NCBI RefSeq assembly: GCF_902652985.1
Contig: NC_047020.1
Location: forward strand, 40,424,001-40,488,000
Direction of reading: 5' to 3'
DNA length: 64,000 nucleotides
DNA from: Pecten maximus
Taxonomy: Eukaryota
Shown: in pieces, positions 6,850 through 40,780 of the stretch
Position numbering within the stretch: position 1 is the stretch's first letter
How the letters are laid out: every line of letters begins with the position of its first letter
Notes under the pieces: generated by a model
What the model was told of the DNA's origin: nothing
What the model saw: only the letters and a program-made list of their open reading frames with translations
Database searches by the model: none
Made by a program: the position numbers and the translations under genes

Positions 6850-8581
6850 TTATGCCACCGGGTCACGGAACTGAATGTTTCCATCTTCATAGTAATTGTC
6901 TATGCAGTCATGTCGGTTAATTTTCGGACACTTTGAAAATATTTTAACCCTCCCAAATCCTACTTCTCTGTAATGCTGTTGATGCATGAACATATCTGAA
7001 TACACAGTACGTGCAAATAAAGCTGGGTTTCTCATTCCGTTTACAAAACGTCCATTCAATGGAATTCTGGTCAAATTTCGATGTTTAGACCTTACTTCGT
7101 ATGATTCCATCGTTCCATGTGACCAGATATCCGTATGCCAGTGTTTGGACAATGCACCTAACTGCGCAGAAATGGATTTTGGAGCGCAATTACTTAAATG
7201 TTCCACTACGACTCGTATGCCTCTAGATCTCAGTTTTACTCCGGCGTTTTTCAATTTCGTGAAATCAGGACACCAAAAATTGAGATCTGCGTCTATTTCC
7301 CATGGGATCACATTGTACATTTTCACAGCTCCGAGGACTGTTCCACAGTTCATCTGACACGATCCATTAATCTTTTCACACATGTCCATGAAGCCATAAA
7401 TTAAGTCTGCCAGCTCTTGAACACAGCACGGTGATCTTACAAATCCTTTTATTCTTTTGCATGGATACGAGTAATCACATCCAAAATGTATAGTCAGTCC
7501 AAAAGAAAACTTTAACTTGTAAAGATTCCGTTTTCGTCCAAACTTCTCCCAGTCTTTTGTCAGCTCACTACGGCGTGGGAAAATCCATATCAAACAAGGA
7601 GTCAGCACAGATAGCAACTTCCGTATTAAGTCTCATAAAGAAATCCTCGTATAATCCCATTGGTGTCAAACTAGAATCAAATTTGATTTGCTTTAATATT
7701 TGGGTTTTGATCAGAAATGGTCCGTCCACGTGGTCACAAAACACACAATCGTGCATTGACTCGTCATATCCTTCCTCGTATACCACCGTGTAGTTCCGGA
7801 ACACTCTCTGATGGCAACCTAAACTCCAAACATTATCAGAGTTTCTGATAGCCCCGCCTACTGCGTTAACATTTAGACTCTCAATCTCACGCACAAGTCG
7901 TTCGATTCGTGCATTTGAATCCAGTTCCAGCACATTTCTTAAAACTAATGTATATTTGGTTTTAACTTCTTCCATTAATATATTCAATGCATCCCCTTCT
8001 GTGGTCGTAGATGTCATGTGCTTTACACGTACATTACTCTGTTCCTTAACATTCCCACCGTAGTCACCAACTATCATTGGAATGTTTTTATCATACGTAT
8101 CTTTAATGAACTCTTTGTCTGTAGATGAGCCATGGTCAAGACGAAGAATGGTGACTATCTCCTCTAGAGGCTTAGCATGGGAACATTCTCTGATTTTGTA
8201 CCCCTTCGCTTTATCAACATAATACTCGGGACACATACTACTCGGTTCATACACTTTCCGTGTGGTGGCGTCTTCAAAGGAGGTTCCAAATCCTTTCAGT
8301 ATTGCGTCCATGTACTCACTTGCATATTTTAATGCTCTCCGTGTTTTAAATCCTCTTGCGTGTATCCTCGCCCTTTTGAGATACATGGCTACATCAAATA
8401 TCTGTCGAGGGATGTTTGATACGTTTACTTGTATTGATGATATGTCGATTGTCTCGGTGCAGGTATCAGAATACTTGAAACTTTGTAAAAAGGATGGGCT
8501 GTTCGTACATCGCAATTGAAAGGAAACTAGGAGAGTAAGCATACTTCCCATTCCAAAACTGAGCATTAGGTAAACGCTGAC
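6850..8581 (-). pseudogene. FKRP/LicD-like nucleotidyltransferase-fold gene copy A, main coding exon, one frameshift (pseudogene or sequencing error)
   Basis: ORFs 7568-8566 and 6850-7617 together align to the intact 569-aa ORF of copy B. There is an extra G at 7577-7579 (GGG vs GG). The acceptor is ...cctttaacag|GTCAGC at 8581. Motifs FGC..C..SPCC, GTVLGAVK, PWEIDAD and HTDIW are retained. Confidence 0.85.
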
Positions 8582-8858
8582 CTGTTAAAGGAAACGTAAA
8601 CAACATTACAATGTTTAAGGAGTGATTGAAGATGGATTTTGCACCCACCATTTAATGATCTATATTTGTTCTATGCATAATCTTCTCTCTACTTTAATGA
8701 TCTTATAATGATCTGATAAGAAGAAAGCTTTCATATGAAATCTAAGAGACATCTTAAAGACTTTTAAGGAGAATTTTGTGTTAATTAAAATTATCAGTGC
8801 TACACCTCAACTGACAGTATTTTTGCTTTCTGAATCAGACTGAAAATAATATAGGCAA

Positions 8859-10145
8859 AACTAGAGACGAAAGAAAAACTACATAGGACGCTTCATTCAA
8901 GAGGAACCATATGTACATTTTTTGTAGGTACATATGGTCTCTAAAAGCTATCGAAGAAGACCTTTTCGGGAATTGGGAATTTTAATACAAAACTTTGACT
9001 GCCTATCATTTTGTTATCTAGATCAAATTCAAAAGTAAAGTTAGAACACAGAGAGGTCAACAAGGGCCTCATCATGTGGCAAGGAAGCAAAATATACACC
9101 ATACGCATCAGTCTCCATATTATTCGGCTGACAGAAATGGAAATAGCTGTATGAAACTTTTTCGTAAGCTTTGATTTGTTTCACTTTTATTCTAATTACG
9201 TCTCCCACGAACAATCTCTGAAGTTGATTCCGTGTTTAATTCCAATCAACTTTGCTTCATAAGGTTTTTTTTCAAAATTTGTAATATGTAATAACACAAC
9301 AAAATGTAAATCAGTGATAACATAAAAATTGTGACCTTTGCATCTGACCCAGTAACTTTGACTTCTAAATTATGACCTTAACATTTTGTCTGTTGTGTCC
9401 TTGTTTAATTCTTACCAACTTTGCCGCATAATGTCATCACAAAAGTTCATCAGTGAAAGGATACAGAATGCGACCTTGGCATTTGACACTTTCACCTTGA
9501 CCTTTGGTTAGTTGACTCTTCGTTTTAGTAAAAAGATACAAAATATTACCTTGGCCTCTGACCCAGTGAACTTACCTTTAGTCAGCTGACTACTTGTTTA
9601 ATTCTTCCTTATTTTGCTTCATAATATCTTAACATAATATTCATCAAAAGAAAGATACAAAATTCGACCTTGATGTTTGACACCACAACCTAACTGCGTG
9701 TTTAATTTTGAACGACTAGGGAAACCTTCCAGTGAATTTTGAGAAAAGTTCCTCTCAAAAAAAATGTGATACGATACTTCAATTATCAAGATCCAAGACG
9801 GCCTTCTGACGGCCTTTTGTTTCCGGATCACTGTCAATATCAAATATAAACAACTACAGACCAAGGGAAAGCTACCAGTGAAGTTTCTGAACAATCTTCC
9901 CAGTACTTCTGAAGAAAAAGCGATAACAATCTTCAATTGTCAAAATTCAAGATGGCCGACTGTCGGCTATTTCGTTTTCCGAATTAGTCTCAAAATCATA
10001 TGATCACAACAACGGACCAAGGGAAACCTGCCAGTGAAGTTTAAGAAAAGTCTGTCCAGTACTTCTCCAGAAATAGCGATTGAAAAATGTTTACAGACGA
10101 ACAACAAACGCCGGGCGATTTAAAAAATGTCCATCGGGCTAAAAA
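8859..10145. mobile_element. Non-autonomous Helentron/HINE-like interspersed element in intron 1 of copy A
   Basis: Begins actagag and ends gggctaaaaa after a gacg-rich tract, with internal degenerate tgacct repeats. A paralogue lies at 26509-27720 and related segments at 12821-13420 and 39150-39420. Confidence 0.55.
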
Positions 10146-38529: not shown

Positions 38530-38969
38530 ATGTTGCTAGGGTTTGTCGTGACTTTCTGGCTCGAAACGTTCCAGTTCTTGATTGGCCACCATACAGTCCA
38601 GATATGTCGTAATCGAGCATTCGGGGGACGGGCTGGACAGGAGGGTTCGGAAGTGCGGCAACTGACATATAACGTCGCTCAACTTAGGCAGGCTCTTATT
38701 CAGGAGTTGAACACCTTGATTGGGCAATGTTAAGGAGTAAGAGCAGCGACTGATGCCAGGGGTGGGCACACGCGATACTGATTTGTACCAGGAAACGGCG
38801 TGGGGTGCTTAAAGATAATCACCTAAAGATGTCTGTGACAATAAAAACCATCAAAATGCAATCAGTAATGATGAAACCATCGAGAAACCCACACCATGAA
38901 CCCATCATCAAAGAATCGTGTAATATAATAACTATCAAAAATAACCTTGCGTTTCTTTTTCTGCTAGTA
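37300..38969 (+). mobile_element. Tc1-family DNA transposon, decayed transposase, in intron 1 of copy C
   Basis: TIRs ctagcggaaaaaagatacgcaa / ttgcgtttctttttctgctag-TA. Translated remnants are RNRFQTATETTRQ, VLFADES, VVVWAAIS, GNLTALRYRDQVL, LDWPPYSPDMS..EH and RGGHTRY. Confidence 0.88.
37834..38064. mobile_element. MITE (GGCCCAGTTG...CAACTGGGCC) nested in the Tc1 transposase
   Basis: Inverted termini interrupt the transposase; a related degenerate copy lies at ~57585-57850. Confidence 0.7.
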
Positions 38970-40756
38970 TATATATCATTTTGGTACATAATTACTGTGT
39001 ATAAGGTATTTTTTTAATTTGGTTGATAAACTTTGCTTCATGGATAAATGATAACTTGATTTGAGATATGGAATATAGGCTTATAGAGCACTTATGGTTG
39101 GAAATCGATCGGTTTCAAATTCAAGTGCTGTAATCTACTTTTCATCATTAACAAGAGATCCAAGAGGAATCACGGCGCCCATCACTGAATGGCCTTTTTT
39201 TCCAATAAGAAATCGTAATACAAAACTTTAACTGACAGTCATTTTACTTCCTAGATCAAACTCAAAATAAAGCTAAAACACAGATCACCATTCTTCTTTT
39301 TTTGTCAAATAGAAATCTTAATACAAAAATAACAATGATAGTCAGTAAGGGTCCCATCACGAGACAAGGGAGCAAAATATACATCATATCCATGTGTCTC
39401 CATATCTTTTGGGCTACGTGTATGTTTCATTTCTTACAACAAGCTTTGGCGACGTCGTCTACAATGCGTTTAGATCCGTTGCTCAGAATATATATATATT
39501 TCTACTATCTAAACAAACTTGGTATATAGTTATATCACATAGTGGACATTTCAACACACCCTTCATTTACGGAATTTCATCCAGAATTTGTTGTCTAACG
39601 GCTCTGGAAATTAGGCATGCTGGGAATCAGGGCTTCAACGTTTTGCTCAATGTCTTTAAAAAGTTTTGATGCTATTTTGTAGATTTAAAAAAAAAATTCA
39701 AATATGTTCTATTTACTCTGGTTTGGAAGATCGAAATTTGCAGTGTTTATTGTTGTGCATTATTTCAATAACCCGATCTTCCAAAACATTTTAAGTGATC
39801 AGAGTTGCAATTTTGAAGGGTATGGAGAGAAAAGTGGTATATCGAGTTTTCTTCTTGATAACTCGGTATTGTAGGCGGTGTAGTTTGAAATCCCCTAAAT
39901 AATGTTTTGATTTTAACATCACTAATTTTGACTTTTATCGTTAGCAAAATTCACTTCATTTTCTTTTTGTTTACATTTTTATTTTGCCGTGGGGCAAGGA
40001 AGTGACACGGCAGATTTCGATCTTCCAAATCGGAGTAAAAAGAACGTAGTCATTGATATGCCATTGAATGTCTTTCCAGAAACCTAATAAGACCTTTGTA
40101 AAACAATAGATTTTCAAATAAGAGTTATAGATTTAATAATAAAAAAAAAAATAGTTCAAAAACCTTGCAAATATTAGATAAGGAATAGAATTTCTATCAT
40201 CGTTTGAGAAATGACATCGAACGTGATGGGTTCAACAATTTTAGGTTAACAGTACTTAACACCATTTTACATATTTATATAGTTACTGAAGGGATTAACA
40301 AATAGTATGACAATCATTTTAGCGGTTTATTAGTAGCATTTGTTACACCAAAATAGCTGTGATTCAGGGTGACGGGATACACCTGTTCAATTGTGTACAA
40401 AACAATGTCAATTGTTTATTCTCGTAAACAGAATACAAACAAATGGATAACAATAATACTTGGTAAAAACGTCAGGGTGGACATCAGTATTGTGAATTAT
40501 CTCATTTATATCAACCAATGAAATATGTTAATTTTGAGTTACGTAATTGAATAATGTACGGAAATCAAATGTATTTACGATTGCACACGGCAGGCCGTTT
40601 ACCTAGAATCTCATTTCCTTCTCAATTAACCAAAACAGCTGTGATTCGGGGACGCGGCACAGACTTGTGTACAAATGAGCATGGCAAGTTGCTACTCGCA
40701 ATGAAGATTCGTTGCGTTTGATAGAATTATAGAATTGCAACTAAAATGTGACTTAC

Positions 40757-40780
40757 CTTCATATTACTGATTAGACACAT
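40757..40780 (-). CDS. Putative coding exon 1 (MCLISNMK) of FKRP-like copy C
   Basis: ATGTGTCTAATCAGTAATATGAAG|gtaagt is a consensus donor, phase 0, in frame with VNVYLVMCFILGG. Confidence 0.65.

What the first reader, a model, noticed from the sequence alone, without database searches (positions are those of the whole stretch)
6850..40780. Tandem array of divergent FKRP/LicD-like phosphotransferases: candidate lineage-specific glycan-decoration system
Seen: three full-length paralogues (A, B, C) plus a fragment, all on the minus strand, encoding ~575-aa type II membrane proteins. Established: FKRP (ribitol-5-phosphate transferase acting on O-mannosyl glycans) has a stem domain, a C4 zinc finger (FGC..C..PCC) and an NTase domain with GSLLGA..IIPWDYDVD and HVDLW; bacterial LicD transfers phosphocholine from CDP-choline. 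These proteins keep the Zn finger, the DxD and the third Asp. They differ by PWEIDAD (Glu at the first acidic position), an extra ~110-aa Cys-containing luminal segment and a Cys-containing C-terminal tail (CPK..HDC..DGNIQF). Inference: they are not the single-copy FKRP orthologue but an expanded Golgi family. They may transfer a different CDP/CMP-activated group (polyol-phosphate, phosphocholine, phosphoethanolamine or aminoethylphosphonate, the last being known from mollusc glycoconjugates) to surface or mucus glycans.
Basis: partly seen in the sequence, partly recalled or inferred. Interest (0 to 1): 0.85.

Follow-up and report, generated by a model that had tools for sequence, protein, structure and literature searches.

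The report
Scallop array of FKRP-like transferase genes
The king scallop carries a tandem array of genes for an uncharacterised, ancient sister family of the muscular-dystrophy enzyme FKRP; these proteins keep FKRP's catalytic core but lack its ribitol- and acceptor-binding loops, so they are candidates for putting a different phosphate-linked group on invertebrate glycans.

Summary
The window is Pecten maximus chromosome DNA. Only copy B (CDS 24555-26279 plus a 12-nt first coding exon at 29248-29259) is intact. Copies A and C each carry one 1-bp homopolymer frameshift and no other stop.

B is transcribed and spliced: contigs from three studies lie on it, and one crosses a GT..AG intron.

The three copies form one end of an array of about 246 kb with at least 7 intact ORFs.

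The proteins are two-domain homologues of FKRP (hhalign 99.9%, E 1e-31; best Foldseek hit is human FKRP). They form a separate clade (100% support). A canonical FKRP sits on another chromosome.

The family is not mollusc-specific. At least 261 clusters (50% identity) match at E <= 1e-30, from bivalves, annelids, arthropods, trematodes, a hemichordate and probably cnidarians. Only the tandem expansion is confined to scallops.

The zinc-finger cysteines, hG[GS/T] motif and three acidic residues are conserved. FKRP's Arg295, the longer zinc loop and the ribitol loop are missing. A Cys-containing N-extension and a C-terminal tail are added.

The most likely function is an active, dimeric Golgi CDP/CMP-X:glycan phosphotransferase with altered specificity. 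The donor is unknown.

The parts
24555..26279 (-). Copy B, main coding exon (exon 2; stop codon at 24555-24557). Intact. With exon 1 it encodes the 578-aa protein LOC117329776 (P0001).
   Evidence: 100% match to P0001; splice acceptor at 26280/26279.
29248..29460 (-). Copy B exon 1: 5' UTR plus ATG at 29259-29257, encoding M-S-L-R. A GT donor follows at 29247-29246.
   Evidence: Contig joint 26277 to 29246 (cut +2) in run X15 and contig piece 29311-29454; sequence read.
26280..29247 (-). Copy B intron (2968 nt, GT..AG on the minus strand). No contig from any run lies on 26361-29118, most of the intron.
   Evidence: tables 2 and 5.
23853..24554 (-). Copy B 3' UTR, at least this far.
   Evidence: Contigs of X15 (23906-24619) and X3 (23853-24175).
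6850..8581 (-). Copy A main coding exon, 93.5% identical in DNA to B. It is broken by one frameshift and has no other stop.
7579..7579 (-). Copy A frameshift: one extra C (CC in B and C, CCC in A).
11472..11683 (-). Copy A exon 1 homologue, 97.7% identical to B's exon 1.
17000..17107 (-). Gene fragment: the last ~36 codons plus stop of a C-type copy, lying at the junction of the 17.7-kb segmental duplication.
   Evidence: (L021).
35440..37169 (-). Copy C main coding exon, about 85% identical in DNA to A and B. It is broken by one frameshift and has no other stop. NCBI models only its N-terminal half (LOC117329777, 369 aa).
36103..36103 (-). Copy C frameshift: one A missing (AAA in A and B, AA in C). 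The position is approximate within the run.
40757..40780 (-). Copy C exon 1, coding part (8 codons, then a GT donor).
   Evidence: N-terminus of P0008.
1..35545 (.). Two tandem units of a ~17.7-kb segmental duplication (1-17105 and 17184-35545). Identity is mosaic, from 84% to 98% in different blocks. One breakpoint lies inside the 3' end of a C-type copy.

Best explanation
The window holds one end of a scallop-specific tandem array of genes from an ancient, uncharacterised sister family of FKRP, here called FKRP-like or FL.

Shown: each gene has a tiny first coding exon and one large exon. It encodes a type II membrane protein with these parts in order:
- a short cytosolic tip and a signal anchor;
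- a helical, Cys-containing N-extension;
- a GT-A-like stem domain that lacks the DxD motif, so it is probably non-catalytic;
- a C4 zinc-finger loop;
- a LicD/NTase catalytic domain;
- a family-specific Cys-containing C-terminal tail.

Inferred mechanism, by analogy with FKRP and LicD:
- The protein works in the Golgi lumen as a head-to-tail homodimer. The stem of one subunit packs against the catalytic domain and C-tail of the other.
- It uses two-metal NTase chemistry (E/D430, D432, D434 and D/E486 in P0001 numbering).
- It transfers the X-phosphate (or phosphonate) part of a CDP-X or CMP-X donor to a hydroxyl of a glycan, releasing CMP.
- The FKRP elements that read the ribitol of the donor and the ribitol-phosphate of the acceptor are missing or replaced. 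The donor head group, the acceptor, or both, should therefore differ from FKRP's. Which donor is used is not known.

In this window only copy B is demonstrably intact and expressed. A and C are each one base away from being intact.
For: Identity and array:
- The window is Pecten maximus. B is LOC117329776.
- The array has at least 7 intact ORFs plus broken copies over C6:40.215-40.461 Mb.

Homology to FKRP over both domains:
- hhalign probability 99.9%, E 1e-31, 394 columns, FL 135-547 against FKRP 55-493.
- The AF2 model has pLDDT 92 and pTM 0.84. Its top Foldseek hit is human FKRP 6kak at E 2e-21.
- VIA-align gives FKRP Z 17 over 352-369 residues, and the stem against B4GALNT1 Z 23, rmsd 2.6 A over 219 residues.

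Separate family:
- The tree split has 100% SH-aLRT support and a long internal branch (drawn as 2.33 + 1.33 changes per column either side of the midpoint root).
- Canonical FKRP coexists with FL in Pecten, Mytilus, Owenia and Glandiceps.

Catalytic residues kept in 99 members:
- G415 in 95, K422 in 98, D432 in 95, D434 in 94.
- First acidic position E in 62 and D in 33; third acidic position E in 59, D in 23, Q in 14.
- Zinc-finger cysteines in 87-94; tail cysteines in 99 of 99.
- All nine array copies compared, A and C included, keep these residues.

FKRP-specific determinants absent, as defined in PMC6965139:
- The zinc loop is 10 residues shorter.
- The Arg295 position is variable.
- The segment holding the ribitol loop (L433-Q437) is deleted.
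- FKRP's C-terminal lid is replaced by the FL tail.

Selection: pairwise dN/dS among array copies is 0.23-0.47, apart from one pair with identical proteins (dN 0).

Expression:
- Contigs from three studies lie on B's CDS, many with 0 mismatches.
- One contig crosses the GT..AG intron.
- No contig lies on 26361-29118, most of the intron.

Homodimer model:
- Score 0.67, best of 3 controls 0.00.
- The mark was reached by 21 of 30 proteins solved as pairs of one chain and by 0 of 23 solved as single chains.
- The runs agree in at least 53% of contacts, and partner pLDDT is at least 75.
- The interface joins the stem (225-282, 328-331) to the catalytic domain and tail (504-534, 566-572). It includes family-invariant residues W254, G273, Y274, S277, C281, D329, T506, P521, R526, D568 and G569.
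Against: - No member of the FL family has been assayed, and no paper on it was found.
- B scores below Pfam's gathering cut-offs for both FKRP_N (22.1 against 27 bits) and LicD (16.2 against 22.6).
- The first acidic residue is Glu, where FKRP needs Asp360. The third acidic residue is Gln in 14 of 99 members. Some members, such as Echinostoma, have degenerate motifs.
- Golgi location and type II topology are inferred from sequence only.
- The dimer pass may reflect the model's memory of the solved FKRP dimer (caveat).
- The runs that cover B are RNA only by inference. The one run on record as RNA, X11, laid nothing.
Confidence: 0.62

Rival explanations
1. FL proteins use the same donor as FKRP (CDP-ribitol, or CDP-glycerol) and differ only in acceptor. 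They would then be extra ribitol/glycerol-phosphate transferases for other glycoproteins.
For: - The overall two-domain architecture, the zinc-finger cysteines and the metal-binding acids are the same as in FKRP.
- The scallop has canonical FKRP and a second LicD gene. It therefore presumably makes CDP-ribitol; that step is inferred, not tested.
Against: - The ~17-residue segment that contains FKRP's ribitol-contacting loop (L433-Q437, with H435 and Q437) is deleted.
- The C-terminal lid (Q482) is replaced (definitions).
Confidence: 0.22
2. Within this window the array is decaying. A and C are true pseudogenes, and only B contributes a protein.
For: - A and C each have a frameshift.
- NCBI models C as truncated, and none of the NCBI proteins found maps to A; its N-terminal half was returned only as the window's own protein.
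- The array also holds a clearly dead copy with 4 stops and a split copy.
Against: - Each has only one lesion, in a 2-3-base homopolymer, and no other stop.
- dN/dS of A against B (0.38) and C against B (0.37) is like that of intact pairs.
- All catalytic and Cys residues are kept.
- The lesions could therefore be very recent or could be assembly indel errors.
Confidence: 0.45
3. FL proteins are pseudoenzymes, for example glycan-binding or scaffolding partners of other Golgi enzymes, with no transferase activity.
For: - Glu replaces the essential Asp360.
- Gln occupies the third acidic position in 14 of 99 members, and the motif is degenerate in trematodes.
- The stem is already a dead GT-A domain.
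Against: - D432 and D434 are kept in 94-95 of 99 members, G415 in 95 and K422 in 98.
- Selection is purifying across the catalytic domain.
Confidence: 0.1
4. The active site is the GT-A 'stem'. The proteins would then be B4GALNT1-like sugar-nucleotide glycosyltransferases with an accessory NTase domain.
For: - The stem is the best structural match of the model (B4GALNT1, Z 23, rmsd 2.6 A over 219 residues).
- phmmer gives E 0.003 against B4GALNT1.
- UniRef names one scallop member after B4GALNT.
Against: B4GALNT1's DDD motif aligns to R-N-V in B. Across 99 members the three positions are mostly R, then D or N, then a hydrophobic residue, so there is no DxD.
Confidence: 0.03

Closest known systems
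[quoted passage not shown]
   Same: - Type II membrane protein with a GT-A-like stem and a LicD/NTase catalytic domain, homologous over both domains.
- C4 zinc-finger cysteines, hG[GS/T] motif, acid-x-D-x-D and a third acidic residue.
- A predicted head-to-tail dimer in which the stem contacts the partner's catalytic domain.
   Different: - Only 17% profile identity and a separate clade, coexisting with true FKRP in the same genomes.
- The zinc loop is 10 residues shorter, with no Arg295.
- The ribitol loop is deleted and the C-terminal lid is replaced by a ~45-residue Cys tail.
- There is an extra N-terminal extension of about 85 residues.
- Glu (or Asp) occupies the Asp360 position.
- The family is multi-copy and tandemly expanded, not single-copy.
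Bacterial LicD / Mycoplasma mf1 phosphorylcholine transferases (Pfam PF04991)
   Same: The NTase-type catalytic core with clustered acidic residues, and cytidine-nucleotide-activated donors. Some FL members pass the LicD cut-off.
   Different: - LicD enzymes lack the GT-A stem, the zinc finger and the FL tail.
- B itself scores below the LicD cut-off.
- Whether FL uses CDP-choline is untested.
B4GALNT1 (GM2/GD2 synthase, GT-A fold; PDB 9H6J-L)
   Same: It is the closest structural match of the FL stem domain (Z 23, rmsd 2.6 A, 19% identity). Sequence similarity is weak.
   Different: The DxD motif is absent in FL. B4GALNT1 has no NTase domain.
Fukutin (FKTN)
   Same: A LicD-type NTase domain. 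A second LicD gene, probably FKTN, lies 17 kb from scallop FKRP.
   Different: [quoted passage not shown] FL has the zinc-finger loop and an FKRP-type stem domain.

Membership tests
FKRP orthogroup (ribitol-5-phosphate transferase) | Groups with FKRP orthologues in a phylogeny, as the single-copy orthologue | tested here: not met
   14 FKRP against 26 FL rows are split with 100% SH-aLRT support. Canonical FKRP is on C9.
FKRP orthogroup (ribitol-5-phosphate transferase) | Stem domain matching Pfam FKRP_N above the gathering score | tested here: not met
   22.1 bits against a cut-off of 27. Scallop FKRP scores 203.9 bits.
FKRP orthogroup (ribitol-5-phosphate transferase) | C4 zinc finger (C289, C296, C317, C318) | tested here: met
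   four aligned Cys, kept in 87-94 of 99 FL members. The loop is 10 residues shorter. Metal binding itself was not tested.
FKRP orthogroup (ribitol-5-phosphate transferase) | Arg295 in the zinc loop, which contacts the acceptor's ribitol-phosphate and is essential | tested here: not met
   the position is Pro in B and variable in the family (K 24, S 19, P 10, R 7 of 99).
FKRP orthogroup (ribitol-5-phosphate transferase) | Ribitol-interacting loop L433-Q437 and C-terminal Q482 lid | tested here: not met
   the ~17-residue segment is deleted in all FL rows, and the C-terminus is replaced by the FL tail.
FKRP orthogroup (ribitol-5-phosphate transferase) | Stem residues His252 and Lys256, which bind the phospho-6-mannose of the acceptor | not tested
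   Human numbering could not be mapped with confidence. No human FKRP sequence was on hand as a reference.
LicD / NTase-fold phosphotransferases | NTase core with hG[GS], DxD and a third acidic residue | tested here: met
   A-G-T, E-x-D-x-D and D486 in B. Vertebrate FKRPs also show G-G-T.
LicD / NTase-fold phosphotransferases | Pfam LicD (PF04991) above the gathering score | tested here: inconclusive
   B scores 16.2 bits against 22.6. The distant scallop paralogues and the hemichordate member pass.
LicD / NTase-fold phosphotransferases | Transfer of an alcohol-phosphate from a CDP-activated donor | not testable with these tools
   This needs an enzyme assay.
GT-A glycosyltransferases (B4GALNT1-like) | GT-A fold | tested here: met
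   Z 23, rmsd 2.6 A over 219 residues.
GT-A glycosyltransferases (B4GALNT1-like) | DxD metal/UDP-binding motif | tested here: not met
   R-N-V in B; there is no DxD in the family.

The most novel reading that the evidence does not exclude
The FL family is the long-sought eukaryotic enzyme class that attaches zwitterionic groups to invertebrate N-/O-glycans and glycolipids. The candidate groups are aminoethylphosphonate, phosphorylcholine and phosphoethanolamine. The scallop array would then diversify acceptor or donor specificity.

Circumstantial support:
- Reviews state that the transfer routes are unknown.
- FL occurs in taxa or close relatives with such glycans: molluscs, orthopteran insects, annelids and, by an ESM Atlas cluster only, cnidarians.
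- The ribitol-reading loop is gone.
- The scallop genome has a PEP-mutase-like gene.

No test discriminates between donors.
Probability: 0.3. Interest if true: 0.85.

Novelty: new variant of a known kind. Interest (0 to 1): 0.55.

Why it matters
FKRP is known as a single-copy enzyme with essentially one established job, adding the second ribitol-phosphate on alpha-dystroglycan. This work shows it has an ancient, widespread, unstudied sister family in invertebrates.

That family keeps the catalytic machinery but has swapped the substrate-reading elements. In scallops it is tandemly amplified.

Glycobiology has no identified animal enzyme for adding phosphorylcholine, phosphoethanolamine or aminoethylphosphonate to glycans, and these groups interact with the immune system. 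The FL family is a concrete, clonable candidate: copy B is a single large exon.

Even if the donor turns out to be a polyol-phosphate, it would extend ribitol/glycerol-phosphate glycobiology beyond dystroglycan.

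Tried and rejected
1. Active GT-A glycosyltransferase in the stem: rejected, because there is no DxD motif.
2. Diversifying selection among array copies: not seen. Pairwise dN/dS is at most 0.47 overall and at most 0.72 in any region. 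Site models were not run.
3. 'Mollusc-specific family': rejected.
4. The word-indexed search with the 99-sequence profile added only Mercenaria paralogues.
5. Four literature searches found no paper on this family. One search was poorly targeted.
6. The search of earlier findings by words found nothing.
7. Run X11, the only run on record as RNA, laid no contig, so the RNA status of X15, X1 and X3 rests on the spliced joint and the absence of contigs over most of the intron.
8. Pfam gave no hit for the repeat-associated ORFs at 20130-21380 and no meaningful hit at 38236-38733.
9. The first AF2 run with 11 sequences was poor (pLDDT 63) and was replaced.
11. For dN/dS only, A was read with its extra base removed and C with an N at the break.
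Searches used B's main exon by reference, or the database protein P0001.

Full report
WHAT IS THERE

The window is Pecten maximus DNA (G000:C6:40424001-40488000) and contains no N. Three paralogous coding regions lie on the minus strand:
- copy A at 6850-8566;
- copy B at 24555-26264;
- copy C at 35440-37154.

A short C-terminal fragment lies at 17000-17107.

Only B is one open frame, of 569 aa from the internal Met and 575 aa open. With a 4-codon first exon it is the 578-aa NCBI protein LOC117329776 (P0001).

A has one extra C at 7579 (CC to CCC). C lacks one A at about 36103 (AAA to AA). Apart from that single indel, neither has any stop before the normal one. NCBI models C only as its N-terminal 369 aa.

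A, B and C are embedded in a 17.7-kb segmental duplication, 1-17105 against 17184-35545. Block identities range from 84% to 98%. One breakpoint cuts a C-type copy, and that cut explains the fragment.

GENE STRUCTURE AND EXPRESSION

Contigs of public runs from three studies were laid on 23800-29700 at 97% identity or more.
- They cover B's CDS and 3' UTR. Many pieces have no mismatch, whereas A is only 93.5% identical to B.
- No contig lies on 26361-29118, most of the intron.
- One contig joins 26277 to 29246 with CT..AC ends on the plus strand, which is GT..AG on the minus strand.

The sequence confirms an exon 1 that ends ATG-TCT-TTA-AGG followed by GT, and an acceptor immediately before 26279. 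B is therefore transcribed and spliced.

Two caveats apply. The covering runs are RNA only by inference. The one run on record as RNA laid nothing.

Searches used B's large exon by reference or the database record P0001.

THE ARRAY IS BIGGER THAN THE WINDOW

A six-frame search of the whole assembly finds the following:
- at least 7 intact full-length ORFs (77-100% identical to B) between C6:40.285 and 40.450 Mb, plus an unplaced scaffold;
- three copies each split into two open frames, with A and C shown to be single-frameshift copies and the third, at 40.216 Mb, not examined at base level;
- one dead copy with four stops;
- fragments.

Three distant paralogues, 37-38% identical to B, lie elsewhere, on C6 at 21.95 and 29.35 Mb and on C14.

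Pairwise dN/dS among the array copies is 0.23-0.47; one pair has identical proteins (dN 0). The stem domain is the most constrained part (0.16-0.29) and the catalytic domain somewhat less so (0.32-0.71). A-B (0.38) and B-C (0.37) look like intact pairs.

WHAT THE PROTEIN IS

Sequence-only searches are weak:
- Pfam FKRP_N scores 22.1 bits and LicD 16.2 bits, both under their cut-offs.
- phmmer against PDB gives human FKRP at E 3e-4 and B4GALNT1 at E 3e-3.

Profile and structure evidence is strong:
- A 99-member family alignment (A2) against 20 canonical FKRPs (A3) gives hhalign probability 99.9% and E 1e-31 over 394 columns. The match spans both domains, FL 135-547 against FKRP 55-493.
- An AF2 model built on A2 has pLDDT 92 and pTM 0.84.
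- Its best Foldseek match is human FKRP at E 2e-21 over about 450 columns.
- VIA-align gives FKRP Z 17. For the stem alone it gives B4GALNT1 at Z 23, rmsd 2.6 A over 219 residues.

The stem lacks the GT-A DxD motif. It reads R-N-V in B, and in the family mostly R, then D or N, then a hydrophobic residue. Like FKRP's stem, it is probably not a glycosyltransferase.

NOT FKRP ITSELF, AND NOT MOLLUSC-SPECIFIC

The scallop has a canonical FKRP on C9. It scores FKRP_N at E 1.5e-58 and carries FKRP's own motifs.

In a maximum-likelihood tree, 14 FKRPs and 26 FL proteins are separated with 100% SH-aLRT support by a very long branch. Pecten, Mytilus, Owenia and Glandiceps each hold both kinds.

A profile search of 1.84 billion cluster representatives finds 261 clusters at E <= 1e-30. 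Named members come from these groups:
- scallops, mussels and a clam;
- annelids (Owenia, Lamellibrachia);
- a centipede, a crayfish, a stick insect and a katydid;
- two trematodes;
- a hemichordate.

The ESM Atlas adds a look-alike cluster whose members are mostly cnidarian. That is a lead, not an alignment.

The family is therefore an old paralogue of FKRP across invertebrates. The P. maximus array copies form a young clade inside Pectinidae.

WHAT IS KEPT AND WHAT IS CHANGED

The defining features of FKRP come from its crystal-structure paper (PMC6965139).

Kept in FL (counts out of 99 members):
- the four zinc-finger cysteines, in 87-94;
- the hG[GS/T] glycine, in 95;
- D432 in 95 and D434 in 94;
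- an acidic residue at the Asp360 position, E in 62 and D in 33;
- the third acidic position, E in 59, D in 23 and Q in 14.

All nine array copies compared, including A and C, keep these residues.

Changed in FL:
- The zinc loop is 10 residues shorter.
- Arg295, which holds the acceptor's ribitol-phosphate, is not conserved.
- The ~17-residue segment with the ribitol-contacting loop (L433-Q437) is deleted.
- FKRP's C-terminal lid is replaced by a ~45-residue tail with two invariant cysteines and a D-G-N-(I/L)-Q-F motif.
- About 85 residues are added between the membrane anchor and the stem. They form two long helices and a Cys-bearing hairpin, with C121 and C135 each kept in 91 of 99.

Glu at the first acidic site is therefore common but not diagnostic.

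HOW IT PROBABLY WORKS

The following is inferred, not shown:
- The protein is a type II Golgi-lumen protein. It has an N-terminal hydrophobic helix and nine N-x-S/T sequons.
- It acts as a head-to-tail homodimer.
- It uses NTase-type two-metal chemistry to transfer the phosphate-linked head group of a cytidine-nucleotide donor to a glycan hydroxyl.

The dimer model passed its controls:
- The score was 0.67 and the best of 3 controls was 0.00.
- The mark was reached by 21 of 30 proteins solved as pairs of one chain and by 0 of 23 solved as single chains.
- The runs agree in at least 53% of contacts, and the partner's pLDDT is at least 75.
- On eukaryotes the pass rate is lower, and a pass may come from memory of the solved FKRP dimer.

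The interface puts the stem of one subunit (225-282, 328-331) against the catalytic domain and C-tail of the other (504-534, 566-572). It contains many of the family's invariant residues. This suggests a role for the family-specific tail.

The parts of FKRP that read ribitol and ribitol-phosphate are gone. I therefore judge a changed donor head group, a changed acceptor, or both, to be more likely than not.

The donor cannot be named from these data. Reviews state that the enzymes adding phosphorylcholine, phosphoethanolamine and aminoethylphosphonate to animal glycans are unknown. The scallop genome has a multi-exon PEP-mutase-like gene. Both points are circumstantial.

VERDICT

It is wrong that the family is lineage-specific.

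The proteins are annotated only as 'uncharacterized' or as 'LicD/FKTN/FKRP nucleotidyltransferase domain-containing'. I found no study of them. I rate it a new variant of a known kind, of moderate to good interest.

Noticed in passing
G000:C9:20430486-20431601 (-) and C9:20448349-20448525 (+); loci L023, L022: Canonical scallop FKRP and a second LicD-domain gene lie about 17 kb apart on opposite strands. The second gene has a 278-aa open frame with LicD at E 5.5e-17 and is probably fukutin.
   Followed up: partly
G000:C6:40285532-40287253 and C6:40318750-40320471 (L007, L006): Two array copies encode identical proteins (dN 0, dS 0.012). This is either a very recent ~33-kb duplication or redundant assembly.
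   Followed up: no
window 6149-9214 vs 23853-26864 compared with 12295-17105 vs 29773-35545: Within one duplicated unit, the block holding the gene is 92% identical between units while downstream non-coding blocks are 98% identical. This fits gene conversion or mosaic history in the array, as earlier notes s1-792321 and s1-792452 suggested.
   Followed up: partly
window 48713-49719; also 5426-6160 and 22743-23231: There are tandem repeats: a ~169-bp unit in about 6 copies at 48.7-49.7 kb, and a minisatellite present in both duplicated units.
   Followed up: no
window 38236-38733 (+), inside copy C's intron: This ORF has a run of 12 prolines. Its N-terminal part reads to me like a Tc1/mariner transposase remnant. 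Pfam gave no supporting hit, so this is unverified.
   Followed up: partly
window 20130-21380 (-): Two ORFs of 132 and 160 aa lie at and next to a stretch (20943-21820) that has no counterpart in the first duplicated unit. They look retroelement-derived, but Pfam gave no hit.
   Followed up: partly
P0073, P0028 (Strigamia maritima), P0087 (Dryococelus): Some arthropod members are modelled as long fusions of 898-1290 aa. One has an N-terminal CAP/cysteine-rich secretory domain. These may be real fusions or merged gene models.
   Followed up: no
G000:C8:6780083-6790007 (-); L031-L034: A multi-exon gene matches the PEP mutase model TIGR02320 exon by exon. The scallop can therefore probably make the C-P bond of aminoethylphosphonate.
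   Followed up: partly
G000:C6:39340548-39341060 (+); L018: A lone N-terminal fragment (aa 29-197, 82% identical to B) lies about 1 Mb from the array.
   Followed up: no
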